Source: Podarcis liolepis
Lineage: Eukaryota
NCBI GenBank assembly: GCA_965112155.1
Contig: OZ218107.1
DNA length: 64,000 nt
Reading direction: 5' to 3' (one strand)
Below the pieces are notes generated by a model. That model worked only from the letters and a program-made list of their open reading frames with translations, searched no databases and was not told the origin of the DNA. The translations under genes and the position numbers were made by a program. Of this stretch, positions 10,682 to 64,000 are shown piece after piece. Numbering within the stretch: position 1 is the stretch's first letter; each line of letters opens with the position of its first letter.

Positions 10682-10828
10682 TTATTTCATAATCTGTAGC
10701 ACGTAAAGAATGCCAAGATTATCAACAGTCACACATACTTTAAAATCTGGAGAAACGTGTAATGATTTAAGGTTTGTTCCATTGGTATAGAATGTTTGTA
10801 GGAGTTGCCCAGTAGCTACATTCCACCA
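10682..10828 (-). CDS. APAF1: APAF1 exon 27 (last coding), WWNVATGQLLQTFYTNGTNLK...LYVLQIMK*
   Basis: AG acceptor 10829-10830; stop TAA 10682-10684; matches the APAF1 C-terminus. Confidence 0.95.
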   Translation of the reverse strand, partial: WWNVATGQLLQTFYTNGTNLKSLHVSPDFKVCVTVDNLGILYVLQIMK

Positions 10829-28800: not shown

Positions 28801-31800
28801 GAAAGTCCAAAGCACTAAGAGTAAAAACAAAACAATTTTGTTATTTTCTAGGTGTGGGAAATAACAGCGATGTATTTAGACAGGGGAGATCTTGATTCAA
28901 ATCCTGGCTTCAATCAGTCATGAAGCTCAATGGGTTACCCTTGATCCAGTCATATCTCACCACCTAAGCTATCCTCATGGGGTTGTGGTAAGAATAAGAT
29001 GGGAATGGGTGGAAGAAGGACCATGTATCCCAACTAAACTTTCTTAGAGGGAGGGAAAGGGAGTATAAAAATGTAGTAAATGCCAGCATAAAATAAACTA
29101 CAAAGGGGGAGCAATATCTTATTATATTTGTTGATCACAAACTAACTGTGGGCAAAATGCAGCCACAAACAGGGCAAATTAAGTTCCTACATATATTAGT
29201 GTAACTAGATGTGACAGCAGCATGACTTGTTGGAACACATCATGTTGATTTAACACAGAGAAATGTGATGGCTGGGAACAGAACACCCTCACGCCCCATC
29301 ACCTCATCATACTTTCTTTTCTCTCAGAGAAGAAAGGACCTCCAGTCTGAGAAATCACCAGAACAAAGCAATAGAGAGTTTGGGGAGAAAAGCCACATCT
29401 TGTATGCTATCTTTCGACATGAAAATGCCAACCTGTACTCTAAAGGTATACATCTGTCACCATCATGTCTAAGCTGAAGCTCAGGCAAAACATGTCTAGT
29501 AGAGACAGGGAAGTGTCAATGTGATTTTAAAAATTTGGAGCACCAGTATATACTATTTGTTTAAAGATTTGTCTTGTAAACTACCATGTGAGGGTAGATA
29601 AGCCTGAAGGAAAAGTTAAAATAAATTTAAATACATTAAGCACTGATACCTTTCCGTAAGTTCCTGATTTCTTCTAAAATGCTGCACATGGCTTTACTTA
29701 TCCATGTTTCAAAAGGATCCATTCATGCTAGAACAAATTCAAAGAGCAGCAACTAAAGTTCCAATCCTAAGCACGCTGACTTGGAAGCCAGTCTCACTTG
29801 TGATCCTCCATTATCTCTTACTATTAGTCATGCTGTCTGTTGCTCATGAAAGTTGGGTGTCCAAAAGCATCTGGTGGGCCACAGGTTCCTCCTGCCTCAT
29901 CTAATGCTTCCCTTTTGGAAAGACAGAAGGACCTATAGTTCTGTTTTCTGCAGTGGCTCCCTGTTTGTGGAATGCTGTCCCCAGGCTCTGGGTGAAAAAG
30001 TTCTTCTTCAACCAGGCCTTTGGCTGATTAATATTCTGTGCCCTTTTAAATGTGTTTGTGGGAGTGGGGTTATTGTTTTGTTTTTGTTTTAACTATTTTG
30101 TGCTTTTAGTCTATACTTTTATTTTGTGAACTGCCATAAGATCTTCAGATGAAGGGCAATAGATAAATATAATAAATAATAATATAGAAGTTTCTATATA
30201 TAGAAGATACAATAAAAATACTGGGCTAATTTCAAACTTAGCGTTCCATTCATGGAAGAAATCTTTGTAAAAGACGTTTGAGCTAACCCATCCAAGTTAT
30301 TTTAAATGTATGAATTTCTCTGTTAACTACAGCCAGAAATGTAAATAGCTGTATAGGTTCAAAGGAGGATAACTGATATGTCATTTGCTTACTTTTACTT
30401 TTCTATCTGCTGAACAAGTGGCAACAAATCTGTCATCTGCTGAAAAAGTGCAACACAGCACTTCATCGTCATGAGCTTTGACTTCCAAAAGTTTTTCTCC
30501 ACTTCCAGCTTTAAACACCTACAAATGCAAATCACAGATACATTAAGTTTAAGCTATTTTAAACATAGATATTAAGGCTGTTGTGTTATTCTTTTACCAG
30601 CTGCGCTGTCCGCATAACTGAAATTTTATTAGTTTAAAAGGAAAAGGGTGGAAAGAAGAGGAAAGATGACCAGCAATATTAAATGTACACCAATATATGC
30701 CATAGAGATTTCTCCTTTTTTCAAAAATGGTTGTATTGTGTGGCTGGAAAAACTCATTGGCATGGGTAATAGTGCCACCCTGTGGTCAAAGGCAGGAAAG
30801 AAAACTAGAGGGAAGCAGGCAACTCCATGAATCCAGTTTGCATCCTTGCCAGGCTTGAACAGGTTGTTTCAACAAGCCCCAGAAAGACAAAGAGAAAAAA
30901 ATATTTATTTCCCTAACAAGAAACAATTATGTACACACCTAGAATAAATTTAAGTAATTGGAAAGCAGCCAAGAAGCTAGATGTGAGGGCCTGAGGAGCT
31001 TTGTCAATTAACACAGAATTACCATTCAGATGTGGGTGGCGCTGTGGGTTAAACCACAGAGCTTAGGACTTGTCGATCAGAAGGTTGGCGGTTTGAATCC
31101 CCACGCCGAGGTGAGGTCCCATTGCTCAGTCCCTGCTCCTGCCAACCTAGCAGTTCGAAAGCACCTCAAAGTGCAAGTAGATAAATAGTACGCTTTGGTG
31201 GGAAGGTAAATGACGTTTCCGTGTACTGCTCTGGTTTGTCAGAAGCGGCTTAGTCATGCTGGCCACATGACCCGGAAGCTGTACGCCGGCTCCCTAAGCC
31301 AATAAAGCGAGATGAGCGCTGCAACCCCAGAGTTGGCCACGACTGGACCTAATGATCAGGGGTCCCTTTACCTTTTACCATTCAGATAGGAACCAACAGT
31401 TCTTTCTCATATTGCTGGAGGACTTCATCAACATGGAGTGTACGAAAGCTCCTCAAACTTGGGTGGAATACGTGGCTACTGGAGGAAGCAAACAGCCAAA
31501 GCTTAAGTGAAGCAGGCTACGTCCTTCTCCCAGCCAGGTGGAAGGAGAGGGGAGAACATATGATTCCCAGCAAAGCCTGTGTGTAGTACACACTGGCTGT
31601 GTTTACATGTCATGCTGAACCATAGTTTAGCACTGGGGAGGCTAACCTGCAGCTCTCCAGATGTCGCTGAATTACAATTCCTATCAGGCTTTGCCAGTAT
31701 TGTCAATGACCAAGAATTATAGGAGTTGTAGTCCAGCAGCTTCTGGAAGGCCACAGGGTAAGGTACTGCTAATTTAGCAGCAATTAAACTAGAGCTTGCA

Positions 31801-39000: not shown

Positions 39001-42000
39001 TCTGAGTCTTCTTTGGCTAGTGAGGAAGGGAACAAGACCAAACATTACATATTGCTCTGGTTCGCCAGAAGCAGCTTAGTCATGCTGGCCACATGACCCG
39101 GAAGCTGTACGCCGGCTCCCTCAGCCAATAAAGCGAGATGAGCGCCGCAACCCCAGAGTCGGCCACCACTGGACCTAATCGTCAGGGGTCCTTTTACCTT
39201 TACCTTTACCATGGCATTGAGAGAAATGGGGAGAAATTATGCTCAAGGATGGGTCAGTTCTAATGTCACACTCATTACAACATCAGTTTTCTGCAAGATG
39301 TCATGGTCACAATTTGTTTTTATGATTCAAAAGTCACAATCTCCATAACCTCCACCAGTGTTTCTTTAAAACGGGTTTTACCTTTGAAGGCACTTTAACA
39401 TCCTTTTGAAGGACAGAAAGATCTCTGTAATAGTCTTTGAAATCTTTTGGCAACATTTCAACACTTATGGACATGGCTTCATCAAGTGCTTCATAATCAT
39501 AAGATGATGATTTCCTTATTCTTTTAAATTGCTTATTTTGAAGTTGTTTAAGGTAGTATTCCCAGCGATTGGGGAAATCTCTTAATAATGCTCCTATCAA
39601 AGATACCACAAGAGGAGAACCTGAAAAACAGGAATGGATGAAATTACTAAATGAAAATTAAACTTTTGATAAAAGAATAGCAAATTGCAAAGAGAATGCT
39701 GTGAAGGAAATGTAATTTTTACATTGAGTTGCTCACTGGTCTAGCTTAGACATCAAAGTTAAATGTAGCTAATTGTTTACTATGCACATATAGTGGTACC
39801 TCTGGTTGTGAACGGGATCCATTCCAGAGCCCTGTTTGCAACCTGAACAGAACGCAACTTGCATTTGAGGGTCACGATTCGCCGCTTCTGCGCATGCATG
39901 TGACATCATTTTGAGCATCTGCGCATGCACAAGCGGCAAAACCCGGAAGTAACCCGTTCTGTTACTTCCGGGTCACCGCGGGACGCAACCTGAAAAGATT
40001 TAACCTGAAGCAAATGTAACAAGAGGTATGACTGTACTGATCTTACCCACTTTGCTTCTCTGTACTAGCACATGGGAGAAGAAACCATGATACCTCGGCT
40101 TAGCATTATGTCCAAACTGTGGGTTTTGCTTTGTTTTCTCTGAAGCAATGCATGATCTGTCAGTCAAGAGCAAACCTTAGATACAGATTGTAGATTGTTC
40201 AAAGTGAAAAAAACCACAATGCTCAGTTTGAAAACAGCAAGGGATTGTGGTTTCTTTCTCCTACATTTTTGCAAAGGAGAAACAAATGCTGCATTTTCAG
40301 TAAATCATTAAATATGGTTTATCATGACATGTGAATGAGGTCACAGTCTAGTAAACAGCATATATAAGATGAAAGTTAAAAATGGTTTCTTTCAAAATGC
40401 AGAGAAAAGGAGCGTTCTTACCTTTGCATTCTTTTACAATACAATCAGCTTTTTCTGGTAGTTCTGTTATTTCTATATTAACAAACCGAGATAATATTTC
40501 AAGTGATTTTTCATGTGTTAGTCCACTTTCCACAGGAATTTCATATTTCTTGCCTGTGTTTAGAGTTTAGATTCAAATAAAAAAGGAAATATTTAATTTA
40601 ATGCATGCTACGTATGAATTTACACTGTAATTAGGATTTAAGTTACAAACATGGGAATTTTAACTGGGCTTGCTTAAATGTGCTGTATTTATTTATTTTA
40701 ATTATTTAATTATTGTTGTTCATGGTATATATGCATGGTATATTCCATAGAATTGTAGAGTTGCAAGGCACCACAAGGATCATCTAGTCCAACCCTGTGC
40801 AATGCAAGAATCTTTTGCCCAATGTGAGATTAAGAGTCACATGCTGTACCATCTAAGGTATTATTATTTAATTTCCTCTATTGTTGTCTATCGCTTCCCT
40901 AATACAGTTGTCTGAATCAACTATTTACAGTTTTCTCAAATTTTGTATGCTCTTCAGTGATCTCACTATACTGGGTCATTCTGTGAAATTCAATAAGAAG
41001 CAGTATTACTAAAAGCTCAAATCCTGTCTTTCTACATCTCTGTCTTCCTAGCTACATAATAGAGATTATGAGCTATTTTTCAAGGACAGTGCAGTTTTTC
41101 TCCTCTGAACAATGCCTACATTACTGTTGCACTTAGTAAGTGTTAATGGTAGTCATGGCAACACAATTAAAAAAACCACACTGTACATGAGTAACCTTAA
41201 ATACTTAAAAGGAGGAAGACGACGCAATCCTTACCAGCTACAGAATCTGTTACACTCCTATCTCTACTGGTGATAAGAACCTGGCAATGACTGTCAAAGG
41301 ATTTTAATACCCAGGAATCCCAAATGTCATCAAGCACCAAGAGAGACCTATTAGGAAAAAAGATACGTCAAGCTTGGAGGCACTGTACACCTGCTTTGAA
41401 GATTCCTCAATATGTTAAGAACCAATAGACTTTTCATTTCACTTCATTTTTCAAAAGTGCTCCCTTTTAAATATTTATTCTAAACAAAAATTTGAGTCTC
41501 ATGTGCTTTATATCCACAACAACTAAAATTGCCCAGAAGGAAGAATTATTGTCTGGGACAATTCTCAAGAGCTTGACTGGACTAAACCATAGCAGTTCTA
41601 TACTTAATGAACAGCATTTTCTATGTATTTTACATTTATTAAACATTTGCAGAGTTAAAGGACATGCTAATACTGTATTCAGTGTTAGCCACATTTGAAC
41701 ATATTTGTTAAAAGATAGTTGTTTTCCAAAAACAGCTAGCTACGTTACAAGAAGCACAATAGAAAAAGCTAAATACTGCTAAATTCCGAATCTGGATGAG
41801 TTGAGATCAGCCAGTAATAGCGGGTGACTGTGGAGAAACCATAGCCTAGAACTTGTAAGACTGAATCAATTCAGGAAGTCTTTTGGACATATGTTCAACA
41901 TATTGCTCATTACAACTAGAATCAAATGGGAGTAAGGAGTTCTATTAACGACAGCTAACAAATCTGGCTCATGCTTTAGGTCGAAGTGGTTTAACACGAA

Positions 42001-45000: not shown

Positions 45001-47201
45001 AAATTGTTCATTAGGCGAGCTGATGATTTCCATTATTTCCTTAGGAAACATTTCTAATCCATGCTTTCTGTGTGAAACTGCTGCAGCCAATCAGCAAAAG
45101 CCAAACAAAGGAAAATCTGATTTGTCCAGTTTCTCCTGCTCCCCGATATGTCCAATCTTTATTCCTCCACAGTTTCTGCCCGAAATGACTGCTGCAAACT
45201 AGTAAAACCCAAACAAGTAAGGAAGTGGGCAAACTCTGGCTGTTTGAATATCCGAATCAACCATTTGTGTAGCAAGGTTTGGGTGTAATTCTGTGTGTTT
45301 GGATAACTGAGATTTCAAGTGCTCTGATAGTGGGACCTTGCGTTTAAATCTTTTCGACTGAAATCAATTAAGTTTGGATTTAGGTGGATTATGTCCCATA
45401 CAACAATTGCTAGGTTACTTAGCAAACAATCCAGGCAGTTGTGCACTTTTGCAGTCCAATATGATGCATGTCTATTCCAAAATAAGTCTCAATGGCAGTT
45501 TTTGAATGCCATCCTAAACCACAGTTTGGTTGAATAACCCTGGTTTCCTTCTGCACTTTCTGAGCTTCCTCCCAGATGGCCAAGAGTCGTTTAGCAACTG
45601 TTGCTTTTAGTTAAGCAGGATTTATCATATTATCTGATAACAACACAGTAGTTAAGAGTAAAACAGTTTAGCTTAAATTTCAAGTCATGGTTTATAAAAT
45701 TTGCTTGTATTAAACTACCTGTGGCCCTCCAGATATTGTTGTATTCTATCAGTCCCAACCACCATGGTCAGGGAAGATGGGAATTTGAGTTCAACATCAT
45801 CTGGAGTTCTCAGATTGCCCACCCAGATTTAAATTAACTGTACTTAATGTTAACCACGGTTCTAAGTTCAGATGACACAGAAAGCTGTAGTTAACTAAAA
45901 ACAGAAGTGAAAGCTTCTTTTGGCCACCTGGTAGCAGAGCACAAGCGCCTAGAAGAATAGGTTTATTCACATTGTGCTAAACCATGATTTAGGATGACTT
46001 CCAAATGCGAGCACTATGACTTACTTCCAGGTAAGCATGTGGCAGGTGGCGCTGTGGGTTAAACCACAGAGCCTAGGGCTTGCCGATCAGAAGGTCAGTG
46101 GTTCGAATCCACATGACAGGGTGAGCTCCCGTTGCTCGGTCCCTGCTCCTGCCAACCTAGCAGTTCGAAAGCACGTCAAAATGCAAGTAGATAAATAGGT
46201 ACTGCTCCAGCGGGAAGGTAAACGGTGTTTCCGTGTGCTGCTCTGGTTCACCAGAAGCGGCTTAGTCATGCTGGCCACATGACCCGGAAGCTGTACGCCG
46301 GCTCCCTCAGCCAATAAAGTGAGATGAGCGCCGCAACCCCAGAGTCAGTCACGACTGGACCTAATGGTCAGGGGTCCCTTTACCTTTAAGCATGTGTACA
46401 TTTGCAGCCTTGATACCATGTACATACCACAGGCACACATCTATAAAGTATTAATTCAACAAACATACATTCATATGAAAAACCATGTCTAAGATACTCA
46501 GGGAGACAATTGCTCAAACCTATGAAAGAATGACACCCCTCTTCTCAAATTTGGAAACCATTTTTATAGGATATAGTCTGAGTGCAACCAGATCTTCTAG
46601 AAGATGAAGACAGTAACATTTTATTTGACGTAAATTGAGCATGTCTATTTTGCTATGTTTCCTATTAACATTATTAAATTACTGTTTTTAGTCACAGAAT
46701 AAGTTATTTTCAGTTAACGGCCACTGAAATAAAGGGGAGAGTCCCACTGATTTCAAAGCCATCTGTCTCCAGATGAAGCTAGTTGCAATTAGTTTCCATG
46801 GATAGGTAGTCACATGTTAATTTAATGACTAACTTTCCATGGGATCTAATTGCAACTAGCTTCATCTGGAGCCAATCCAGGTTTTCATTTAGCTAAAATA
46901 TTTCTACTTTTTTCTGTTAAAGGTATCAACTTTACAACTTCAATGTTCAACTTTGTATTGCACTAATGTCCATGAGAACCTGAAGAGCACTGCATTTATA
47001 AGAGAGTCTGTAGGTGCTTAAATATTACAGCAGCATAAAATACAAAAACTGCAAATAGTTTACCTGGGCTTTTACTTTCTCCTCTTCCAGCAATGTTAAT
47101 GCTTCATCCGCAATCATATGATCCATTATGTAAGAAGTCTTGATATCTCTTTCCAATGCCTCGCAATTCTGAAGCAAATAACTTCGAGCCATCATATCCA
47201 T
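10682..47201 (-). CDS. APAF1: Apoptotic protease-activating factor 1, complete spliced CDS (26 coding exons, 3756 nt, 1251 aa; CARD - NB-ARC - WD40)
   Basis: Exons (minus strand): 47064-47201, 44681-44870, 43977-44174, 42614-42797, 41235-41347, 40422-40553, 39382-39620, 37474-37641, 35290-35415, 34252-34365, 32744-32928, 31946-32072, 30393-30518, 27959-28093, 26549-26674, 25223-25384, 23720-23848, 21661-21786, 19979-20098, 17987-18112, 15842-15967, 15395-15514, 14985-15110, 13025-13150, 11170-11316, 10682-10828. All introns are GT-AG with consistent phases and no in-frame stops. Walker A GMAGCGKT, Walker B LLVLDD and LHD motif are present. Colinear with recalled human APAF1. Confidence 0.97.
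11170..11316 (-). CDS. APAF1: APAF1 exon 26 (WD40), VWNVLRGELL...SSGGYIQ
   Basis: AG/GTAAGT boundaries; 147 nt; phase 0. Confidence 0.95.
11512..12123. mobile_element. Degenerate hAT-like non-autonomous DNA element (boundaries approximate)
   Basis: 3' end GGCCAGAGATTCCCCACCCCTG resembles hAT-Charlie termini; internal imperfect inverted repeats; no clean TSD. Confidence 0.4.
13025..13150 (-). CDS. APAF1: APAF1 exon 25 (WD40), VWSFESSSVLHKLNGHDGCVRCCAFS...GEIR
   Basis: AG/GT boundaries; 126 nt. Confidence 0.95.
13430..13880 (+). mobile_element. CR1 LINE 3' fragment, degenerate (boundaries approximate)
   Basis: AGATTCAGGACAGACAAAGGAAAGTACTTCTTC...TGGAACTCA...GATGTGGAGATGGCCA resembles the CR1 ORF2 C-terminal region. 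Confidence 0.6.
14985..15110 (-). CDS. APAF1: APAF1 exon 24 (WD40), LWNTVTGELERDIICHEDT...SADKTAK
   Basis: AG/GTCAGT boundaries; 126 nt. Confidence 0.95.
15395..15514 (-). CDS. APAF1: APAF1 exon 23 (WD40), VWNWQTEEFILLKGHKEP...SFDGTVK
   Basis: AG/GT boundaries; 120 nt. Confidence 0.95.
15842..15967 (-). CDS. APAF1: APAF1 exon 22 (WD40), VLNLSSGNILKSRTGHKEAV...SSDDSTIQ
   Basis: AG/GT boundaries; 126 nt. Confidence 0.95.
16135..16495 (-). mobile_element. Sauria SINE, full length
   Basis: Head GGGACGCGGGTGGCGCTGTGG and (ACCTTT)n tail on the minus strand; 13-bp TSD TCTTCCTTCATTA at 16122-16134 and 16500-16512. Confidence 0.9.
16547..16891. mobile_element. Tc1/mariner (Tigger-like) MITE, family B
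   Basis: TIR CAGTGGTGCC(T/C)CGCAAGAC; TA flanks. Confidence 0.88.
17575..17722 (+). mobile_element. tRNA-Lys(CTT)-derived SINE with CR1-type 3' tail
   Basis: TAGCTCAG..GGTA.AGCATGAGACTCTTAATCTCAGGGTC...TTCGAGCCCCAC is a tRNA-Lys-like head with a broken acceptor stem, followed by a CR1-like end TTGGACTAGAT...ATTCTATGATTCT. Related fragments at about 36375-36440 and 40745-40840 (-). Confidence 0.8.
17987..18112 (-). CDS. APAF1: APAF1 exon 21, LINGFTGHTVYQTEEQEPFISCCCL...NGTVK
   Basis: AG/GT boundaries; 126 nt. Confidence 0.93.
19979..20098 (-). CDS. APAF1: APAF1 exon 20, IWETKKVCESSAVVLKREIDV...KHLQ
   Basis: AG/GTAAGT boundaries; 120 nt. Confidence 0.95.
21173..21390. mobile_element. GC-rich hAT-type MITE
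   Basis: Imperfect TIR CAGCGGCG.AG / CTCCGCCAGTG; 8-bp TSD TTCAGGAG at 21165-21172 and 21391-21398. Confidence 0.8.
21661..21786 (-). CDS. APAF1: APAF1 exon 19 (WD40), IWNIESSSKIADCRGHMSWVH...SDDQTIR
   Basis: AG/GTGAG boundaries; 126 nt. Confidence 0.95.
23199..23554 (-). mobile_element. Sauria SINE, full length
   Basis: Same head and tail as the other copies; TSD CTTTCTAGAGG at 23188-23198 and 23555-23565. Confidence 0.9.
23720..23848 (-). CDS. APAF1: APAF1 exon 18 (extra WD40 repeat cassette), LFDVKTSDLLTEVLISHHSTIQYCDFCP...YSVE
   Basis: AG/GTAAGT boundaries; 129 nt (43 aa); corresponds to the alternatively spliced WD40 exon of mammalian APAF1-XL. Confidence 0.94.
25223..25384 (-). CDS. 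APAF1: APAF1 exon 17, LWYAHSANELKTID...AAKNRLF
   Basis: AG/GTAAGT boundaries; 162 nt. Confidence 0.95.
26549..26674 (-). CDS. APAF1: APAF1 exon 16 (WD40), LWDLNKKQCRNTLFGHSSSVTHCRFSPDD...DGTLK
   Basis: AG/GT boundaries; 126 nt. Confidence 0.95.
27959..28093 (-). CDS. APAF1: APAF1 exon 15 (WD40), VWNSRTGQLVCVFEEHAEQVNCC...NDTFVK
   Basis: AG/GTAAGT boundaries; 135 nt. Confidence 0.94.
29925..30180 (+). mobile_element. L2-like LINE 3' fragment, degenerate (boundaries approximate)
   Basis: Resembles the L2-like ends at 35538 and 49550; AATAAATAAT tail. Confidence 0.5.
30393..30518 (-). CDS. APAF1: APAF1 exon 14 (WD40), VFKAGSGEKLLEVKAHDDEVLCC...DRKVK
   Basis: AG/GTAAG boundaries; 126 nt. Confidence 0.95.
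31032..31374 (+). mobile_element. Sauria SINE
   Basis: Head GGGTGGCGCTGTGGGTTAAACC; tail CCTTTACCTT; 13-bp TSD TTACCATTCAGAT at 31019-31031 and 31375-31387. Confidence 0.9.
31946..32072 (-). CDS. APAF1: APAF1 exon 13, NKKSMKNMYRLVVRPHTDAVYHACFS...MLQ
   Basis: AG/GTAAG boundaries; 127 nt. Confidence 0.95.
32744..32928 (-). CDS. APAF1: APAF1 exon 12, DAIARENFQEFLSLNGHLLGRQPFPDIVQLGL...VEW
   Basis: AG/GTAAG boundaries; 185 nt. Confidence 0.95.
33138..33202. repeat. Compound microsatellite (CT)n(CA)n
   Basis: Directly visible. Confidence 0.97.
33302..33867. mobile_element. Tc1/mariner-type non-autonomous DNA transposon with GC-rich core
   Basis: TIR CCGTATTTTTCGCTCTATAGG at both ends; TA flanks. 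Confidence 0.9.
34252..34365 (-). CDS. APAF1: APAF1 exon 11, ELCALMFSLDWIKTKTELVGPAHLIHEY...LDEK
   Basis: AG/GT boundaries; 114 nt. Confidence 0.95.
35290..35415 (-). CDS. APAF1: APAF1 exon 10, ALHKKVVDQY...QEDCMYWYNFLAYHMASANMHN
   Basis: AG/GTAAGT boundaries; 126 nt. Confidence 0.95.
35538..36022 (+). mobile_element. L2-like LINE 3' end with (TTA)n tail
   Basis: Translates ...RAFSAVAPIWWNTL, an L2-type ORF2 C-terminal motif; followed by AATAAA and (TTA)n at 35969-36022. Confidence 0.75.
37474..37641 (-). CDS. APAF1: APAF1 exon 9, VFCILWDLETEEAEDILQEFVNKSLL...LHDLQ...QLQ
   Basis: AG/GT boundaries; 168 nt. Confidence 0.96.
38228..38449. mobile_element. Tc1/mariner (Tigger-like) MITE, family A
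   Basis: TIR CAGTGGTACCTC.GGTTA; TA flanks; homologous to 6301-6542. Confidence 0.88.
38455..38660 (-). mobile_element. L2-like LINE 3' fragment (boundaries approximate)
   Basis: Reverse complement resembles 49660-49860. Confidence 0.6.
39053..39210 (+). mobile_element. Sauria SINE, 5'-truncated
   Basis: 3' half of the SINE with repeated ACCTTT tail. Confidence 0.85.
39382..39620 (-). CDS. APAF1: APAF1 exon 8, GSPLVVSLIGALLRDFPNRWEYYLKQLQNKQFKRIRKSSSYDY...VPSK
   Basis: AG/GT boundaries; 239 nt. Confidence 0.97.
39791..40034. mobile_element. Tc1/mariner (Tigger-like) MITE, family C
   Basis: Degenerate TIRs (C/T)AGTGGTACCTC / GAGGTATGACTG; TA flanks. Confidence 0.7.
40422..40553 (-). CDS. 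APAF1: APAF1 exon 7, KKYEIPVESGLTHEKSLEILS...VKECK
   Basis: AG/GTAAG boundaries; 132 nt. Confidence 0.95.
41235..41347 (-). CDS. APAF1: APAF1 exon 6 (Walker B), SLLVLDDIWDSWVLKSFD...DSVA
   Basis: AG/GTAAG boundaries; 113 nt. Confidence 0.96.
42614..42797 (-). CDS. APAF1: APAF1 exon 5, CFPGGVHWVSVGKQDKAGLLMKLQNLC...KYPR
   Basis: AG/GT boundaries; 184 nt. Confidence 0.96.
43257..43586. mobile_element. Tc1/mariner (Tigger-like) MITE, family B
   Basis: TIR CAGTGGTGCC(C/T)CGCAAGACGAA; TA flanks; internal AAGCCGCT repeats. Confidence 0.88.
43977..44174 (-). CDS. APAF1: APAF1 exon 4 (Walker A), KTILCEGGVPQRPVVFVTR...GMAGCGKT...SLLK
   Basis: AG/GT boundaries; 198 nt. Confidence 0.97.
44681..44870 (-). 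CDS. APAF1: APAF1 exon 3 (CARD), TTQRERAAMLVKIILAKDNYAYVSFYNALLHEGYKDLAALL...TSY
   Basis: AG/GTCAGT boundaries; 190 nt. Confidence 0.96.
46042..46386 (+). mobile_element. Sauria SINE
   Basis: TSD TAAGCATGTG at 46032-46041 and 46387-46396. Confidence 0.9.
46767..46871. repeat. Near-perfect inverted repeat (about 46-bp arms, outer 26 bp perfect)
   Basis: CTCCAGATGAAGCTAGTTGCAATTAG ... CTAATTGCAACTAGCTTCATCTGGAG. Confidence 0.92.
47064..47201 (-). CDS. APAF1: APAF1 exon 2 (first coding, CARD), MDMMARSYLLQNCEALERDIKTSYIMDHMI...KAQ
   Basis: ATG at 47199-47201; GT donor 47062-47063; probable acceptor gives exon start 47244. Confidence 0.95.
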
Positions 47202-58026: not shown

Positions 58027-61000
58027 CTGTTGGAACATAACATTATTAGTATCTGGAATTATTCATGCACTTTCACAGTTCAGTATCAGTTTAAATCCTC
58101 ACCTTTAAATCCCAGCCTCTTCAGTACTTGAGCAGCTGAACTGCCTTTTTCTTTGTTCAACACGGATACCACAGAATCAGCAGGATGTGAAACGATGGCA
58201 CAGAAGACCCCAGCTGAAAAGCAAGTAGTCACCATTAATTTAAAATATTCATTAATATGTTTATACATATTCCAGAAAGATCCTATGTCAACAGGAGACT
58301 GACTCACAACTGCTATAGGGAGATGAGATCTCCACAACTAATTACATAACATACTTGCATCATTAGATGCCCCTGTCACTTTAAAAGCAGTTAGATAATT
58401 CAATAATCCTGCAGAACCTACTAAAGACATTGGCCAATTTTGTGTGCAACATCCACAAATCTGAATGCGACTTCTGTGATTCAGGGCAGTAGCTTCCTGG
58501 TGCTTGTCAAACAGGTCAGTTTCAAAACAAGCCCACTAAACCATAGTTTATAAAGCTGGCTTTTAAAGCTGGAGTTTCAAGGTAAAGGACCCCTGACAGT
58601 TAAGTCCAGTAGCGAACGACTCTGGGGTTGTGGTGCTCATCTTACTTTACTGGCTGAGGGAGCCGGCGTACAGCTTCCGGGTCATGTGGCCAGCATGACT
58701 AAGCCACTTCTGGCGAACCAGAGCAGCGCACGGAAACGCAGTTTACCTTCCTGCCGGAGCGGTACCTATTTATCTACTTGCACTTTGACGTGCTTTCAAA
58801 CTGCTAGGTTGGCAGGCGCTGAGACTGAACAACAGCTCACCCTGCCGTGGGGATTCGAACCGCCGACCTTCTGATCAGCAAGCCCTAGGCTCAGTGGTTT
58901 AGACCACAACACCACCTGCGTTCCATAAAGCTGGAGTTTATTATACTATTATTTATCATCTGTATGCAAGGGCAAACCAAGATCCTATGAAAGTGAAATA
59001 AAATGCTGCTGAAGGCATTTTAATCTGCCTACGTGGGAGAATACAGGAAAGCATGCAAGCCAGACTCTTCTTCGGACTTGCTCATGAATACTAAACTGTT
59101 ACTATATTCCAAAAAGTTAGTATTTCCTTACCTATATAACCTGCTACAAATGTAACAACCAGCTGTTCTCCTTTTGAACATTCGCTCCTTGGTTTCGGGA
59201 CAACGTACTTGTAAAGCGCTTCCACAGTTCTTTCAAAGCAGGCAAATTTCATCATGGTGTATGGAATCTGCCTCATCCATAATGGAACAACACCTTTGTA
59301 GAAACTTCAAAGTAGACAAAACAATTAGAAATCCCAAATTTAAGCGCTTCTGATTTGGAATTAATTCTGGAAGACATGGGAATTCAAATCAGTTACGCTA
59401 CCTGAATGCAACAAATGAATCTCAATGGCAGAGCACATAGTTTTAATATAGTAGGTCCCAGGCTCAAAACCTGGCACTATTAGGCAGAACAGGGAAAGAC
59501 ACCTGTGTGAGACCCCAGGAAACACAGGCGTGACTAACATTTTGCCCTAAACAACCATGTCATTTATGCCATGGGTCGGCAAACTAAGGCCCGCGGGCCG
59601 GATCAGGCCCAACTGCCTTCTGGATCTGGCCCATGGACAGTCTGGGAATTGCCACGTGGATCGCCAGCGCACACTTTCTTTTCCCTCTCCCTCACACGGT
59701 AGCAGCACCTCCTCCCTCCCTCCTGGTTTCTCCCCACTCTGCCTAGAAGAGGAAGGGGGCTGGGCTTTGTTGGTGGCGGCAGCAGCAGCAGAACTCGAGT
59801 GGTTGCCATTTTAAGCCGCCCCTCTCCAGAGCCCTTTCGCATGCCGATCACTGTTCTGCCACCACCACCGCTAGCCCCTGCTGCTCGTAAGACACAGGTA
59901 AGCAGCCACTGCAACTCGTGGTACTCTTGCATAATTTTTTTTTTCAAAATATAGCCCGCCCCCCCAAGATCTGAGGGACAGTGGACTGACCCCCTGCTGA
60001 AAAGGTTTGCTGACCCCCGATTTATGCACACACTAGAAATACCAGTATTAGCAAAGACTGAATTAAGTTTAGTGATGCCTTGCCTTGTGAAAACACAGTT
60101 GCATTGAAGTGTTTCTTTCAAACTAGTCATATCAGAAACAACCTAAACCTCTAGCCTCGCTCTTAAAAGAACAATGGATATATAGTCCCTTTTGCCTTTA
60201 ATCTTGGAATTGATTGATAATTGTCCACAATCCAGCCAAATCCTGATAGTGGAAAATGACATGTATTGTATTACAGCCATTGCTATCAGAACATAAAAGA
60301 CCAGAGTGAAGGTATATTATTCTCACATGCCAATGACTCAAGCATCTTTGACTGTACAACCATAAAGTTGTTGATCCCTCTTGGCTGGAACTACTCAAAA
60401 CCAAAGCTGTAAGCAGAACTCAGCACAAGAGACATCTAACAAAGATGGATCTAAGGGAGCATGTTGGCTCATATTGCTTAAGAACTCAGAACTCTGCTGC
60501 ATGTCTAAAGCAATAATATCCATGATCAAAGCTAAACAGTTCATAAACAAGGAGCTGTGCAGGATCATCAAGAGCCACTTTAGGGCCATGACTTAACTGC
60601 TGTAATACTTACGCCCAAACACCTTCTTCGGCAAACATTTTTGGAGCAGCTTGTCTCAGTGTATTTGCATACCCAGGCTGTGTCTGAATGCGCACCTTAG
60701 CAGCTTCCATTGGAGCCAGAGCAATATCAGCAAAGAACTCTGCACTGGCAGATGCAGCCAAGTATAGTGATGTACGCCACAGATATGTATTTTCCTGAAA
60801 TAAAATTTAACAGACCAGAAAATATGTTCATATGATATTCCTTGGACAAATTCACAATAAAGGGGTGCTGAACTGCAGGATAAATAAACTTACCTCTCCC
60901 AACATGTTGCTATACATGATTTTGAAGACTTCATAGAAACCAAATTTGCAGAGCCCTTGCATGGAATATCCAATAAATGTTGGAGCCCATCCTTTTGCCA

Positions 61001-63537
61001 AACCACGAACACCATCCTCTTTGACAGTAACTGAAAAGCCGTTGAAGATGCTCTTATATTTTTGTGGATCCACCTAAACAAGTTTTGAGAAGTCAGCAGT
61101 TAATAATTTTTTTTAACCTTTCTCACATTCACAGCAACAACCAATATACTCCAAACATATAGACATCGTACTTAATGATTGTTTTAAAGAGTTTAGGATT
61201 TTTACCAAGTGAAGAAGAATGCAGTGAAGAGAAAGATTAAAAATGACAAGTCAACTGACAGTGGCAAGATGATTGCAGAATTTCATGAAAGGTTTTGTGG
61301 AAGTAATTTTTGAAAGGGGAAAAAATTCTGTGACAAGTAGTAAGATAAAGAACAAATATAGGCTGCAAGTATAAGATTCCTGGGTTTTGACACAACTTAA
61401 ATATATATGCATATATAAGATATACGCAACTGGCCAAACCAGCTCTACTCATCAATTTGGAAATTTAATCAAAGAAACATCCAGTTCTAACAGTGTATCA
61501 TTCTACAAGGTACACTGGAAGCTGTGATGCACCATATAACTAAGTTAATTCTACAACCGAAGAATTGTAATCATCCAATATTGAAATGTTCAATTAAGCA
61601 ACGTATTATGAATGTGCTTCAGTTGGGAGGAAGATTTTGAAGGATTAAGGCAGTAGCAAATACGACTTGCATTAATCAAGATAAAAAATTCCTTCCAGTA
61701 GCACCTTAAAGACCAACTAAGTTAGTTCTTGGTATGAGCTTTCGTGTGCATGCACACTTCTTCAGATACCACGAAATATGCACAGACTATGGCAGACCAA
61801 CACGGCTACCTATCTGTGACTTGCATTAAGTGAAAGAAGACGGGATTTGGGTTGAACTGCAAGAATATGTGAAAGCAAAAAGGGACAGTATCAGTATGCA
61901 GATATTCAAACTTTAATATCACAAAAACTAACAGCGCATTGGGGTGGGGTGAACTGTTACTCTTCATGGTAAGAACACCAGTACTGTCTCAACTGAATAA
62001 ATGGGTAATTAACAAGTGTCCACTTATTAGGGTTTTTGTATTGTTTTAAATGTATTAGCTTTTGTGTTCAAGTGTTTCATTATCTTATGTGTAAATGCAT
62101 CTGAAACGATGGCTTAGAAAGCAATTAATAAATCAATTGTAAAAAGAAGTACTCAGAAAAGTTCTGCATAAATGTTCTGAAAAAGGCTGCAATTTGTTAC
62201 AGTTATTTAAGGTTTGCCTAGATATGTGCAATCTCAGTAAAAACTGTTCAATATAACAAAAATATTTTATGCAGAAATTGGCAATATGCTATTTTGTTTA
62301 AAAAAATTGACTTTATAAGATGTTAATACTCTCTGGTCCTACCTTCCTACCTCATGTCGCCCTCTACTGACTTGTTCCATTTCACCTTTCATCTTACTTC
62401 CTGGCCTCTGACTTCTGCATGAACAGGATTACATTTTCTGTATTTGGATCATACACAGCTCAAGCATATTTCCTCAATACTTTTAGCTGCTTTAGAGGAA
62501 TATAATATTTGAATCAACTTTGTGAAATAAATATCTAAAATATCTAAAATAAAAGCACTCTTTTTAATATATTACAAATATAAGCAAAGGGTTAACTTCA
62601 GATTCTTCATTCCACCTAACCAACTTCCTTCTGCCATAAAGCTAGAGGTTGGTTCATTATATGGCTAAAATCCTATGTACACTTCCTTGGGAGTGATTCC
62701 CACTGAACTGAGTGCAACTTCTAAGCTAATTTGCAAAGGATCATACTGTTTCTCATTGACTACATCCTCACATATTCAAGCTTCCATTGTCGAAGTTTCC
62801 ATTGTCAAATGCATGGATCATTGTTATCTTTTCTTCAAATTATAACTCCACAACAAAGAAATGAGACATGCATGAAGTCATTCAGCCTTTATGCTACATG
62901 CATTATAAAGATTCTGAATGTTTAGTATTCAAATATATTAGGCTCAAATATTTTAGATGTATTTGTGCTCATTAACTCATGAAGCTTTCAAACACAAATA
63001 TCTGCCATTACTGCTTATTTGTCAAATGCCAGTTACATAGTTCCTAACTAAATCTGGCTCAATTTAAAATTTGTCCAATTATTTCATCCCAAATGATGGG
63101 GGGGGGAATCCATATTTGGCAGCATACAAACCTGGATGCGACACTTCACTAAATCCAAAGGTACCACTGCTGTATGTGTCAGACCACAACTTAGGACCCC
63201 ACCAAAGCCACAGAGAGCGTAAAACTTGAGAGAGCCATATTCACAACTGTGTTCTTCTGCAGCAAAGAAAAGACACACCATGCTGTTAAATAAACTACAT
63301 GCAACGATATAAAAAACTTTATTTGGGTGAAATCCAAGCCTTGTTTCCTTTTGATTAGTAAGATTTCACACTGTTATCATGCTATGATAACCAACTTGAC
63401 ATGCAATCAAACCTGAATTCGGCATTTAACGAGATCTAAAGGAACCAATGCTGTGTGCGTGGTACCACAGCTAATAATCCCACCAAAGCCACAAAGGATG
63501 AAGAATCTGCCAGACCCATATGCACAGCTATAGTCGT
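57866..63537 (-). CDS. SLC25A3: Mitochondrial phosphate carrier SLC25A3 (PiC), partial: exons 3A/3B-8, 5' exons outside the window
   Basis: Exons: 3A 63413-63537, 3B 63132-63256, 4 60894-61073, 5 60613-60794, 6 59132-59304, 7 58103-58213, 8 57866-58026. Carrier signature motifs PLDLVK, PMEAAK and PADSVV. C-terminus [28 protein letters not shown] at 57752-57757 and 57797-57802. Confidence 0.97.
58103..58213 (-). CDS. SLC25A3: SLC25A3 exon 7
   Basis: [36 protein letters not shown]; 111 nt; AG/GTGAG boundaries. Confidence 0.96.
58578..58925 (-). mobile_element. Sauria SINE
   Basis: 14-bp TSD TAAAGCTGGAGTTT at 58564-58577 and 58926-58939. Confidence 0.9.
59132..59304 (-). CDS. SLC25A3: SLC25A3 exon 6
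   Basis: [31 protein letters not shown]...AGYI; 173 nt. Confidence 0.96.
59570..60019. mobile_element. hAT-type non-autonomous DNA transposon
   Basis: Imperfect TIR CATGGGTCGGCAAAC / GTTTGCTGACCCCCG; 8-bp TSD ATTTATGC at 59562-59569 and 60020-60027. Confidence 0.85.
60219..60465 (-). ncRNA. SNORA53: H/ACA box snoRNA SNORA53 (ACA53)
   Basis: Lies in SLC25A3 intron 5, the known host gene. Starts AACATGCTCCCTTAGATCCATCTTTG and contains GTCAAAGATGCTTGAGTCATTGGCATG, matching recalled human SNORA53. H box AGAATA at 60318-60323; ACA 3 nt from the 3' end at 60222-60224. Confidence 0.9.
60613..60794 (-). CDS. SLC25A3: SLC25A3 exon 5
   Basis: [46 protein letters not shown]...EEGVW; 182 nt. Confidence 0.96.
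60894..61073 (-). CDS. SLC25A3: SLC25A3 exon 4
   Basis: [33 protein letters not shown]...MLGE; 180 nt. Confidence 0.96.
61676..61817. mobile_element. Penelope-like element terminal (pLTR) fragment
   Basis: CCTTCCAGTAGCACCTTAAAGACCAAC...GCTTTCGTGTGCATGCACACTTCTTCAG resembles reptile Penelope pLTRs, followed by an inverted piece (GACTATGGCAGACCAACACGGCTACC). Flanked by 12-bp direct repeats GACTTGCATTAA at 61664-61675 and 61818-61829. Confidence 0.75.
61730..61771 (-). ncRNA. Minimal type I hammerhead ribozyme motif
   Basis: Minus strand reads UGGUAU-CUGAAGA-A-GUGUGCAUGCACAC-GAAA-GC-UC^AUACCA: intact CUGANGA/GAAA/UH core, 6-bp stem I, hairpin stem II, and palindromic AGCU in place of stem III. 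Confidence 0.8.
63132..63256 (-). CDS. SLC25A3: SLC25A3 exon 3B (ubiquitous isoform)
   Basis: [42 protein letters not shown]; NAGNAG acceptor, so the start is 63256 or 63253. Confidence 0.95.
63413..63537 (-). CDS. SLC25A3: SLC25A3 exon 3A (muscle/heart-type isoform), mutually exclusive with 3B
   Basis: [42 protein letters not shown] matches recalled mammalian exon 3A ([31 protein letters not shown]); 125 nt; not in the ORF track. Confidence 0.93.
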
Positions 63538-64000
63538 CTGCTTAAAAAGAGATAAGTACAAGTTGACAAACTACAGAATATGGCATTTGAAGTTAGCATT
63601 AACTTATGTAAGCTCAATCAAGAAATTTCACTTTTCTCCTAAAACAAGTTTGTCTTCCAAAATTTATGAAGTGGTAGTATGTCAACTAAAAGCATTTATT
63701 GTTTTTACCAAGACTGCCTGAAAACATTCTCAAAGTAATTAAAATGGATCTTAATTTACTTTCAAATAACCATGTTCAAGGACCAGTATCAATATCAACA
63801 CATAGGTTGGTATGCTACTTGACAAAGATGTCTATGCTAACAATGAATGGGATTCAAAATAATATAGTTACTGCACGTGTCATAGGAATGACCAAAATAT
63901 AGGTATTTACAAGGTGCATTCTGCTTAAGGCAACACTTTCTTCCAAGAGATGTGCTGTGCAGCTATTAAAAGCCACATAAATATTAGATAAGGGTAAATC

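What the first reader, a model, noticed from the sequence alone, without database searches (positions are those of the whole stretch)
61664..61829. Intact hammerhead ribozyme core, delivered by a Penelope-like insertion, on the sense strand of SLC25A3 intron 3
Seen: a 142-bp insert flanked by 12-bp direct repeats (GACTTGCATTAA). On the SLC25A3 (minus) strand it reads UGGUAU CUGAAGA A GUGUGCAUGCACAC GAAA GC UC^ AUACCA (61771 to 61730). All catalytic-core nucleotides are present, stem I is a perfect 6 bp, and stem II is a 14-nt perfect palindrome. There is an extra A between A9 and G10.1, and stem III is reduced to the palindrome AGCU. Predicted cleavage is between 61736 and 61735, about 660 nt upstream of exon 4. 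Established: Penelope-like retroelements carry minimal type I hammerheads that usually need to dimerise through the palindromic stem III to cleave. Inference: SLC25A3 is a highly expressed housekeeping gene, so this motif would be transcribed in its pre-mRNA downstream of the mutually exclusive exons 3A/3B. It could cleave in trans-dimers, with other SLC25A3 transcripts or other genomic Penelope copies, and so affect intron turnover or splicing. Stem II also contains a UGCAUG RBFOX motif. As a single copy it may be inactive.
Basis: partly seen in the sequence, partly recalled or inferred. Interest (0 to 1): 0.8.

Follow-up and report, generated by a model that had tools for sequence, protein, structure and literature searches.

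The report
Young Penelope insert carrying hammerhead motif
The hammerhead-ribozyme motif in this lizard SLC25A3 intron is real, but it is the standard minimal ribozyme of a very abundant Penelope-type jumping gene that landed here recently (three related species still have the empty site), and nothing shows that it cuts or regulates the host RNA.

Summary
A 142-nt insert (61676-61817) lies between perfect 12-nt direct repeats. On the minus strand, sense to SLC25A3, it carries a complete minimal type-I hammerhead (61771-61730), 660 nt upstream of exon 4.

It is ordinary for its kind. The layout matches the published "min-HHR" of Penelope-like elements: an extra base between A9 and G10.1, a G10.1-C11.1 pair, a long helix II, and a helix III reduced to the palindrome AGCU.

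Contigs of three related species show the precise empty site. One close relative has the insert. Each genomic run holds about 5,800 to 12,800 contigs matching the insert, many at 99% or more. The intact core therefore reflects youth, not selection.

The insert is composite:
- an 89-nt piece from the hammerhead to the element's 3' end;
- a 13-nt filler;
- a 37-nt "tail" module, inverted relative to its usual orientation.

This is the known signature of Penelope insertions.

No second copy lies in the 64-kb window, and folding disfavours the catalytic dimer. Published work finds single min-HHRs inactive without a partner or the element's protein. Rfam hammerhead models do not score the motif. 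No RNA evidence could be obtained. The scan has noted the same element at many other places in this genome.

The parts
61664..61675 (.). Left copy of the 12-nt target-site duplication (GACTTGCATTAA). Its AT-rich end ATTAA abuts the 3' end of the hammerhead-sense element copy.
   Evidence: Perfect direct repeat with spacing 154. In the empty-site contigs of three species the 12 letters fit either side of the joint.
61818..61829 (.). Right copy of the target-site duplication. Its first 4 letters (GACT, 61818-61821) also match the end of the element's tail module, so the true duplication may be 8-12 nt with 4 nt of microhomology.
   Evidence: Many family copies run on to 61821 and then into unrelated AT-rich flanks (table 7).
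61676..61817 (-). The 142-nt insert as a whole. It is absent from the orthologous site in organisms F, G and I and present in the window's genome and in organism B.
   Evidence: The joint 61663->61818 'skips 154' occurs in one contig each of X9, X12 and X16. X2 contigs enter the insert from both sides (61300-61702 and 61793-62200).
61676..61682 (-). Seven junction letters at the element's 3' end that other family copies do not share. Probably extra or untemplated letters at the start of reverse transcription.
Evidence: Family contigs stop matching at 61683 (or 61694) and continue with other letters (tables 7 and 8).
61683..61771 (-). Main family-homologous piece (89 nt): the hammerhead plus about 47 nt downstream, to the element's proximal 3' end. 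It is a 5'-truncated copy in hammerhead-sense orientation.
   Evidence: The longest pieces of family contigs in all four runs span 61681/61694 to 61760/61771, most of them 61683-61769/71 (table 8). Summed depth is highest in bins 61703-61764.
61730..61771 (-). Minimal type-I hammerhead motif: helix I 61771-61766 with 61735-61730; C3-A9 61765-61759; extra A 61758; helix II 61757-61744; G12-A14 61743-61741; A15.1-G-C-U16.1 61740-61737; C17 61736. The predicted cut is between 61736 and 61735.
   Evidence: The layout matches the published PLE min-HHR. There is no Rfam hit.
61772..61784 (-). A 13-nt filler between the two element pieces, rare or unique among family copies. In the predicted fold of the insert it pairs with the 5' strand of helix II and competes with the ribozyme fold.
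   Evidence: This is the lowest-depth bin of the insert, and matches break at 61769-71 and at 61785. Minimum-free-energy fold of the 142-mer.
61785..61817 (+). 'Tail' module, 37 nt if counted to 61821. In most family copies it follows the element's 3' region in hammerhead-sense orientation. Here it sits upstream of the hammerhead and is inverted, so it is a very short inverted second copy.
   Evidence: There are 'opposite strands' joints 61686<->61785 in X2, X9 and X12. The loose-end consensus before 61785 is the reverse complement of 61683-61698 plus about 6 nt. Copies end at 61821. It matches the 30-40-nt PLE tail and the inverted 5' copies described in PMC8557442, PMC3846280 and PMC11167929.
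60897..61073 (-). SLC25A3 exon 4 (context): the first exon downstream of the motif, 660 nt from the predicted cut.
   Evidence: Translation. Pfam Mito_carr E = 3.7e-12, profile positions 38-94.
63132..63263 (-). SLC25A3 exon 3B (context): the last exon upstream of the motif. Its alternative, exon 3A, lies at 63413-63538. Bounds are approximate.
   Evidence: Translation. Both exons hit Mito_carr profile positions 5/8-34.

Best explanation
[quoted passage not shown] It derives either from the pseudo-LTR end of an autonomous element or from a short non-autonomous derivative of one.

How it arose (inferred). The element's endonuclease nicked both strands of an AT-rich site about 12 nt apart. Each 3'-OH primed reverse transcription of element RNA.
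- One cDNA started at the proximal start site and ran through the hammerhead before stopping (61683-61771).
- The other started at the distal start site and stopped after only the 37-nt tail (61785-61821).
- The two were joined through 13 nt of filler.
- Gap repair produced the 12-nt duplication.

What the hammerhead is. It is the element's own standard min-HHR. In the element's life cycle it lies in tandem pseudo-LTR transcripts, and it needs a second copy and/or the element's protein to cleave.

What it does here. It is a solo copy inside the SLC25A3 pre-mRNA with no partner in reach. It is most likely catalytically silent and is removed with the intron, with no effect on the host gene.

Shown: the insertion, the duplication, the empty sites, the abundance of the family, the composite structure and the motif. 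Inferred: two-ended priming and catalytic silence.
For: - Precise empty site in three species, and occupied junctions in a close relative. Flank divergence from the window is about 0.5% for the carrier (B). It is about 1.5%, 2.8% and 4.3% for the non-carriers F, I and G (table 8). The insertion is therefore recent.
- Between 5,782 and 12,797 contigs per genomic run match the insert at 85% or more. About a third match at 99% or more. Only one site in the insert (61724) appears among the listed variants at 10% or more, though 8 rows of that table were not shown.
- Composite structure: inverted 37-nt tail, filler and two alternative left ends (61683 and 61694). This fits published PLE insertion features: 5' truncation, an adjacent inverted truncated copy, a 30-40-nt tail between two reverse-transcription start sites, cleavage and extension of both DNA strands at ATT-like sites, and short TSDs.
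- The motif has every min-HHR trait listed by Cervera and de la Pena 2014. It has the same layout as the Anolis Poseidon_Ac ribozyme, compared by eye over about 40 nt.
- Published inactivity: a single min-HHR gave no detectable cleavage and dimers cleaved poorly. The Anolis ribozyme cleaved only with the element's protein, and the authors failed to detect RNA-seq reads beginning or ending at the cut site.
- No second copy in the window.
- Folding: the double-hammerhead dimer is -20.9 kcal/mol, two monomers are -23.4 and the extended duplex is -40.4. Helix III adds only 0.5 kcal/mol. Helix I has a probability of 1-18% in native context.
- The reading frame after the hammerhead closes after 17 codons, so the insert has no coding capacity (read).
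Against: - No RNA data could be laid on the site. Silence is therefore inferred, not observed.
- The copy is fully intact, lies on the sense strand of a highly expressed gene, and has a longer helix I (6 bp) than many family copies.
- Element protein and many other element transcripts may be present in cells of this species, so protein-assisted or trans cleavage is not excluded.
- Direct homology to an annotated PLE was not shown. The insert has no RT or endonuclease coding sequence, and no repeat library was available. The Poseidon_Ac consensus could not be aligned because it has no reference id here.
- Thermodynamic folding ignores tertiary contacts and proteins.
- The gene's 5' part beyond 64000 was not visible, so a partner copy in introns 1-2 cannot be excluded.
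Confidence: 0.87

Rival explanations
1. The motif is active in the host transcript. It pairs with a second copy, from another SLC25A3 pre-mRNA or another element transcript, or it is helped by the element's protein. It then cleaves the SLC25A3 pre-mRNA in the intron and so affects intron turnover, splicing or gene output.
For: - The catalytic core is intact, on the sense strand, with a 6-bp helix I.
- The family is abundant and apparently recently active, so partner RNAs and protein may exist.
- The Anolis ribozyme is protein-assisted.
- Conserved intronic hammerheads exist in amniotes (RECK, CTCL, DTNB; PMC6155905).
Against: - The insert is absent in three related species, so no conserved role is possible.
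- It is one of thousands of like copies.
- There is no cis partner in the window.
- The catalytic dimer is disfavoured by about 2.5 kcal/mol against monomers and by about 20 against the extended duplex. Helix I is mostly unformed in context.
- Single min-HHRs are inactive in vitro and dimers cleave poorly.
- The authors of the Anolis study failed to detect RNA-seq reads beginning or ending at the cut site of the element itself.
- The conserved amniote intronic hammerheads are canonical motifs with a real helix III and loop-loop contacts, unlike this one.
Confidence: 0.05
2. The insert is not a fragment of an autonomous Penelope element. It is a copy of a short non-autonomous hammerhead-bearing family mobilised in trans by Penelope enzymes: a 'mini-PLE', or a monomer of an animal non-LTR retrozyme. 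This rival concerns classification and is compatible with the passive-relic reading.
For: - The frame after the hammerhead closes after 17 codons, and there is no AUG at the A9/10.1 position where Poseidon_Ac starts its ORF.
- Family copies are short, and most matching pieces are 80-90 nt.
- A 2026 preprint derives animal non-LTR retrozymes from PLE pseudo-LTRs. It reports reptile families averaging 176 bp and many monomers, with about 44% of Xenopus copies in introns.
Against: - Contigs of short-read assemblies break in repeats, so short pieces say little about element length.
- No tandem copies were seen here.
- The motif is the helix-III-less min-HHR typical of PLE pseudo-LTRs. It is not the canonical type-I hammerhead, with loop contacts, of retrozymes.
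- A stop in one young copy's frame does not define the family.
Confidence: 0.35
3. The insert was co-opted as a splicing-regulatory element, for example as an RBFOX site (UGCAUG) near the mutually exclusive exons.
For: UGCAUG occurs at 61754 on the sense strand.
Against: - The hexamer is part of the element's helix II palindrome and is partly base-paired.
- Two other UGCAUG occur in the same intron, much nearer exon 3B (62902 and 62872).
- The insert is lineage-specific.
- It lies 1.4 kb from exon 3B and 0.66 kb from exon 4.
Confidence: 0.02
4. The hammerhead-like string is a chance match.
For: No Rfam hammerhead family scores it.
Against: - 0 of 100 shuffles gave a match to either descriptor.
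- The motif is shared by thousands of copies in four species.
- It has all the extra, non-descriptor traits of PLE min-HHRs.
- The Rfam models include a helix III that this class lacks (from my own knowledge of the models).
Confidence: 0.01

Closest known systems
Minimal hammerhead ribozymes (min-HHR) of Penelope-like elements (Cervera and de la Pena 2014, PMC4209133; dimer cleavage by Lunse et al. 2016, as cited in PMC6765202)
   Same: Type-I topology. Full C3-A9 and G12-A14 boxes. One unpaired base between A9 and G10.1. A G10.1-C11.1 pair. A long helix II and a short helix I. No helix III hairpin, only a palindromic 15.x-16.x tetranucleotide, so cleavage is expected only in dimers. Massive copy number, mostly as solo truncated copies. 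Already reported in reptiles.
   Different: Helix letters are specific to this lizard family. Helix I is 6 bp here against the usual 4-5, partly through junction letters. Activity was not tested.
Poseidon_Ac (PAc) of Anolis carolinensis and its protein-assisted hammerhead (Frangieh et al. 2024, PMC11167929)
   Same: Squamate PLE with the same ribozyme layout: CUGAGGA-U-G...C-GAA-ACGU-C against CUGAAGA-A-G...C-GAA-AGCU-C here. Both DNA strands are nicked and extended at AT-rich ATT-like sites. There are two reverse-transcription start sites downstream of the hammerhead, which define a 30-40-nt tail. Copies are 5'-truncated.
   Different: There is no evident sequence similarity outside the core. 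This was compared by eye over the ribozyme only, because a full alignment could not be run. In PAc the ORF starts at the extra base (A9-U-G10.1), whereas here that position reads AAG and the frame closes after 17 codons. Here the proximal 3' end lies about 53 nt after the cut, against about 85-92 nt in PAc.
Animal non-LTR retrozymes (Cervera and de la Pena 2020, PMC7229834; Li et al. 2026 preprint, 10.64898/2026.07.22.740005)
   Same: Short non-coding hammerhead-bearing repeats related to PLE pseudo-LTRs. Monomer copies are dispersed, and many lie in introns.
   Different: Retrozymes are tandem arrays with canonical type-I hammerheads and give circular RNAs. Here there is a solo copy with a helix-III-less motif, and there is no evidence of circles.
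[quoted passage not shown]
   Same: A type-I hammerhead on the sense strand of an intron of a protein-coding gene, thought to derive from retroelements.
   Different: Those are conserved across birds, mammals or reptiles, and they have a real helix III and loop-loop tertiary contacts. Rfam has models for them (from my own knowledge). This motif is lineage-specific, lacks helix III and gets no Rfam score.

Membership tests
Hammerhead ribozyme, PLE min-HHR subclass | Catalytic boxes C3-U4-G5-A6-N7-G8-A9 and G12-A13-A14, an A15.1-U16.1 pair, and H17 before the cut | tested here: met
   CUGAAGA at 61765-61759, GAA at 61743-61741, A at 61740 and U at 61737, C at 61736.
Hammerhead ribozyme, PLE min-HHR subclass | Helices I and II flank the core in type-I order, with a G10.1-C11.1 closing pair | tested here: met
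   The minimum-free-energy fold of the 42-mer gives a 6-bp helix I and a 5-bp helix II that starts with G-C, z = -2.2. In native context, however, helix I has a probability of only 0.01-0.18.
Hammerhead ribozyme, PLE min-HHR subclass | One unpaired base between A9 and G10.1, palindromic 15.2-16.2, and no helix III hairpin (Cervera and de la Pena 2014) | tested here: met
   Extra A at 61758 and AGCU at 61740-61737. The criteria were read.
Hammerhead ribozyme, PLE min-HHR subclass | Match to a curated covariance model (Rfam hammerhead families) | tested here: not met
   No hammerhead hit at the gathering threshold on the whole window, nor at E up to 10 on 61400-62100. These models include a helix III that this subclass lacks (own knowledge), so the failure bears on the canonical families and not on the min-HHR subclass.
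Hammerhead ribozyme, PLE min-HHR subclass | Site-specific self-cleavage after H17 | not testable with these tools
   It needs in vitro transcription or end-specific RNA sequencing. Only contigs were available.
Penelope-like element (PLE) insertion | ORF with a telomerase-like RT and a GIY-YIG endonuclease | tested here: not met
   The insert is 142 nt and the frame after the hammerhead stops after 17 codons. There are no other element pieces in the window. This is expected for a 5'-truncated or non-autonomous copy, but the enzyme link is not shown here.
Penelope-like element (PLE) insertion | Hammerhead motif inside the terminal (pseudo-LTR) region, upstream of the 3' end used for reverse transcription | tested here: met
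   The hammerhead lies 47-53 nt upstream of the shared 3' ends at 61683 and 61694. The published pattern was read.
Penelope-like element (PLE) insertion | Optional 30-40-nt tail and an adjacent inverted 5'-truncated copy | tested here: met
   The 37-nt module 61785-61821 normally follows the 3' region in sense orientation. Here it is inverted and upstream (opposite-strand joints and loose-end consensus).
Penelope-like element (PLE) insertion | Short target-site duplication at an AT-rich site | tested here: met
   A 12-nt duplication ending in ATTAA. The empty site is seen in three species. The flanks are 66% A+T. Published PLE duplications are 8-10 nt, with nicking at ATT.
Penelope-like element (PLE) insertion | Sequence homology to an annotated PLE consensus (Repbase/Dfam) | not tested
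   No repeat library is among the tools. The Poseidon_Ac consensus has no reference id, so it was not aligned. Only the roughly 40-nt ribozyme was compared by eye, and it shows the same layout with different letters.
Animal non-LTR retrozyme | Tandem head-to-tail units, each with a canonical type-I hammerhead | tested here: not met
   A single copy, with no tandem in the window. The motif lacks the helix III loop.
Conserved (domesticated) intronic hammerhead | Orthologous conservation across species | tested here: not met
   The site is empty in organisms F, G and I.

The most novel reading that the evidence does not exclude
Penelope elements appear recently active in this lizard and its close relatives. 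Element protein and abundant element transcripts might therefore assist cleavage of solo sense-strand min-HHRs inside highly expressed pre-mRNAs such as SLC25A3. That would impose a low-level, lineage-specific cut in the intron: a transposon-borne cost, or raw material for regulation. The hypothesis could be tested directly by comparing carriers with the empty-site relatives.
Probability: 0.04. Interest if true: 0.6.

Novelty: new member of a known kind. Interest (0 to 1): 0.12.

Why it matters
As it stands it matters little. It is one more copy of a known class: Penelope-type minimal hammerheads have been reported in reptiles since 2014 and were studied biochemically in Anolis in 2024. The useful points are practical.

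1. Rfam hammerhead models miss this whole class. Genome annotation of squamates will therefore not flag thousands of such motifs.
2. This locus gives a clean natural experiment. The site is occupied in two taxa and precisely empty in three. It could be used to ask whether a sense-strand min-HHR in a highly expressed intron has any effect in vivo.
3. The composite anatomy is a compact genomic illustration of the two-strand priming and two start sites seen in vitro for the Anolis element. It consists of a truncated copy, a filler and an inverted tail, with two alternative 3' ends across the family.

Tried and rejected
- Rfam at the gathering threshold on the whole window, and at E up to 10 on 701 nt, gave no hammerhead hit. 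I did not take this as evidence against the motif, because the min-HHR class lacks the helix III of those models.
- A search of the window for further copies used a 20-mer with 3 mismatches, two descriptors, and blastn with word size 7. It found none. The 15-nt near-repeat at 61538 scores at chance level (E = 3).
- A metagenome scan with a relaxed descriptor gave 9 loci. None is from this lizard family. L004-L006 show the same layout with compensating helices. L005 and L006 have only short ORFs, so I could draw no link to PLE enzymes from them. I dropped this line.
- The scan's own index, searched by sequence, gave nothing.
- Lunse et al. 2016 (PMC5785218) is not held. It is cited only through the review PMC6765202.
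- Alignment of the insert to the Poseidon_Ac consensus was left out, because that sequence has no reference id here.
- RNA evidence: no listed run is on record as RNA, and all holders are kept as contigs. RNA ends, strand and level could therefore not be examined.
- A shared 9-mer (CTGCCATAG) between the insert's upstream piece and Poseidon_Ac helix II was considered. About 3 such matches are expected by chance for these lengths, so I rejected it.
- Exons were first located with short peptide motifs recalled from memory. That was only a lead. The exon identities rest on the Pfam Mito_carr hits by reference and on SNORA53.


Full report

- GACTTGCATTAA occurs at 61664-61675 and again at 61818-61829, bracketing 142 nt (61676-61817).
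- On the minus strand the motif runs from 61771 to 61730.
  - Helix I: UGGUAU (61771-61766) pairs with AUACCA (61735-61730).
  - Core and extra base: CUGAAGA (61765-61759), then one extra A (61758).
  - Helix II: the palindrome GUGUGCAUGCACAC (61757-61744).
  - GAA (61743-61741), AGCU (61740-61737) and C17 (61736).
  - The predicted cut falls between 61736 and 61735.
- Two descriptor searches found only this site in 64 kb. None of 100 dinucleotide-preserving shuffles gave a match.
- The isolated 42-mer folds as expected: a 6-bp helix I and a 5-bp helix II with a CAUG loop, at -11.7 kcal/mol, z = -2.2.

**2. Host-gene context.** Confirmed.

Minus-strand translations give consecutive mitochondrial-carrier exons.
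- By reference, 63413-63538 and 63132-63263 both hit Pfam Mito_carr profile positions 5/8-34. These are the two alternative exons 3A and 3B.
- 60897-61073 continues at profile positions 38-94 (exon 4), and 60612-60788 is the next exon.
- SNORA53 lies at 60220-60465 on the same strand (183.6 bits). To my knowledge SLC25A3 hosts this snoRNA in human.

The motif is therefore on the sense strand of the intron between exon 3B and exon 4, 660 nt upstream of exon 4.

**3. Is it a true, recent insertion?** Yes.

Logan contigs of four public runs from four coded organisms were laid on 61300-62200.
- In X9 (organism F), X12 (G) and X16 (I), one long contig each covers both flanks. Each jumps from 61663 to 61818, skipping 154 nt, with 12 letters fitting either side. 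That is the exact empty site with one copy of the duplicated target.
- In X2 (organism B) one contig runs 61300-61702 and another 61793-62200. Both junctions are occupied and no skipping contig was seen.
- Flank differences from the window are about 0.5% for B, 1.5% for F, 2.8% for I and 4.3% for G (table 8).

The insertion postdates the split from F. It is shared with, or segregates across, the closest relative.

**4. It belongs to a very abundant, young family.**
- The same call laid 6,683 (X2), 12,797 (X9), 5,782 (X12) and 459 (X16) contigs. Nearly all fall on the insert alone.
- About a third are 99% or more alike. Summed depth in the insert is four to five orders of magnitude above the single-copy flanks.
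- Only one position inside the insert (61724, outside the ribozyme) appears among the listed alternative letters at 10% or more. Eight further rows of that table were not shown.

The intact catalytic core is what a young copy of a recently amplified family looks like. It is not evidence of selection at this locus.

The scan's own index holds 115 notes on hammerhead plus Penelope in this genome. Several concern sense-strand intronic copies (HYOU1-like, PKP3-like, AGBL4, SLC25A21), and two follow-ups reached the same verdict. These are unchecked AI notes. I use them only to show that the element is common.

**5. Anatomy of the insert.** Matches of the family contigs break at fixed places (tables 5, 7, 8).
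- The main shared piece is 61683 (or 61694) to 61769/61771. It holds the hammerhead plus about 47 nt downstream.
- A second shared module is 61785-61821.
- In other copies this module is joined to the first in the opposite relative orientation (joints 61686<->61785, 'opposite strands'). The letters preceding 61785 in those copies are the reverse complement of 61683-61698 plus about 6 nt.
- The usual element RNA therefore reads hammerhead, 3' region, then the 37-nt module. Some copies end before the module and some after it.

This is the optional 30-40-nt 'tail' lying between two reverse-transcription start sites (PMC11167929; PMC8557442; PMC3846280).

In this insert the tail lies upstream of the hammerhead and is inverted. 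It is separated by 13 nt (61772-61784) that the family does not share. Another 7 unshared nt (61676-61682) lie at the other junction.

The literature reports the following for Penelope-like elements:
- heavy 5' truncation;
- an inverted 5'-truncated copy next to the 5' end;
- short duplications at AT-rich targets (8-10 nt in rotifer elements);
- for the Anolis enzyme, nicking and extension of both strands at ATT-like sites.

My reading is inference. Two cDNAs were primed from the two nicked strands. One is 89 nt long and the other is only the tail. They were joined with filler, and gap repair gave the 12-nt duplication. The first four letters of the right repeat (GACT) also match the tail's end, so the duplication may be 8-12 nt with microhomology.

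**6. What kind of hammerhead is it?**

Cervera and de la Pena (PMC4209133) defined the min-HHR of Penelope-like elements by these traits:
- no helix III;
- a palindromic 15.2-16.2;
- a conserved extra base between positions 9 and 10.1;
- a conserved G10.1-C11.1 pair;
- a long helix II and a short helix I.

They found such motifs in thousands of mostly solo copies, including in reptiles. This motif has every trait.

The Anolis Poseidon_Ac consensus shows the same layout across its tandem junction (CUGAGGA-U-G...C-GAA-ACGU-C). There the extra U and G10.1 complete the ORF's start codon. Here the same position reads AAG and the frame closes after 17 codons. This copy is non-coding and not of the Poseidon_Ac sequence family.

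I could not align the full consensus because it has no reference id. That step is left out.

No Rfam hammerhead family scores the motif. To my knowledge those models include helix III. The failure therefore excludes membership in the canonical families, not in the min-HHR class.

Metagenome contigs L004-L006 carry the same layout with different, compensating helix letters. This is weak independent support for the class design.

**7. Would it work here?** Probably not.

Published tests:
- A single min-HHR gave no detectable self-cleavage, and dimers or trimers cleaved poorly.
- PLE hammerheads are thought to need the tandem layout (PMC6765202).
- The Anolis ribozyme cleaved only when the element's protein was added, and the authors failed to detect RNA-seq reads beginning or ending at its cut site.

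At this locus:
- There is no second copy in the 64-kb window, which covers the whole gene downstream of exon 3A. The 5' part of the gene beyond 64000 is unseen.
- The classical double-hammerhead dimer has swapped helix I, an intramolecular helix II and a 4-bp AGCU/AGCU helix III. It evaluates to -20.9 kcal/mol, against -23.4 for two separate monomers. Helix III contributes only 0.5 kcal/mol.
- The favoured dimer is an extended duplex driven by the 14-nt palindrome (-40.4). In it the two AGCU segments cannot meet.
- In native context helix I has a pairing probability of 0.01-0.18. In the best fold of the insert, the filler pairs with the 5' strand of helix II.

These are thermodynamic predictions without tertiary contacts or proteins. 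They lower the odds of activity but do not exclude it.

**8. The RBFOX suggestion.** UGCAUG at 61754 is part of the element's helix II. It is one of three such hexamers in the intron. The other two (62902 and 62872) are native and much closer to exon 3B. Nothing singles it out.

**9. Comparison with known systems.**
- It works like a PLE min-HHR and passes that class's sequence tests.
- It resembles the Anolis PAc system in insertion signature.
- It differs from animal non-LTR retrozymes, which are tandem, have canonical hammerheads and form circular RNAs.
- It differs from the conserved intronic hammerheads of amniotes (RECK, CTCL, DTNB). Those are orthologously conserved and have helix III.

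A 2026 preprint reports that about 44% of hammerhead-bearing retrozyme copies in Xenopus lie in introns. An intronic location is therefore commonplace.

Whether this lizard family is the end of an autonomous element or a non-autonomous derivative is open. I put the latter at about 0.35.

**10. Limits.**
- No RNA evidence could be obtained.
- No repeat library was available.
- Run and organism names are coded, so the species cannot be named.

**Verdict.** The Penelope and min-HHR origin is supported. A host function is not supported. It is a new member of a known kind and of low interest. The locus offers a clean occupied-versus-empty comparison if anyone wishes to test in vivo activity of solo min-HHRs.

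Noticed in passing
window 60220-60465 (-): Full-length SNORA53 H/ACA snoRNA (183.6 bits, E = 1.6e-44), in the SLC25A3 intron between the exon at about 60612-60788 and the one near 59300. To my knowledge SLC25A3 also hosts this snoRNA in human.
   Followed up: partly
window 23300-23550, 46042-46291 (-), 58673-58921, 31035-31279 (-), 16236-16502, 39053-39105 (-): A SINE-like repeat of about 250 nt is present in five to six copies at 81-94% identity. One copy lies inside an SLC25A3 intron. Its family was not identified.
   Followed up: partly
window 62013-62167: The flank about 200 nt from the insert is moderately repeated. Summed contig depth is roughly 10-50 times the single-copy level in the three DNA runs, and there is a shared variant at 62113. 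This is probably an older repeat fragment, and there is no second copy in the window.
   Followed up: partly
L004 31-61 (-), L005 277-304 (+), L006 1357-1384 (+) and 277-304 (-): Unrelated metagenome contigs carry the same minimal hammerhead layout (CUGANGA-A-G...C-GAAAGCUC), with different, compensating helix I and II letters. L006 has two copies in opposite orientation about 1 kb apart, like inverted Penelope ends. Only short ORFs lie nearby.
   Followed up: partly
window 63413-63538 (-) and 63132-63263 (-): Both mutually exclusive exons 3A and 3B of the phosphate carrier are intact. Both match the same part of the Mito_carr profile (positions 5/8-34).
   Followed up: yes
window 61321 and 61891-61894: Small species-specific indels occur in the intron flanks of the related species. 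A 7-8-nt A/G-rich insertion follows 61321 in three runs. Insertions of 9-10 nt near 61891-61894 occur in organism G only. This is ordinary intron divergence.
   Followed up: no
run X16 (organism I), contig 13, on window 61687-61771: In a run guessed to be RNA, a 664-nt contig holding the element's hammerhead piece has depth 202, against about 11 for the SLC25A3 intron contig. If the run really is RNA, some element-bearing transcript is well expressed in that species. The run's type is only a guess.
   Followed up: no
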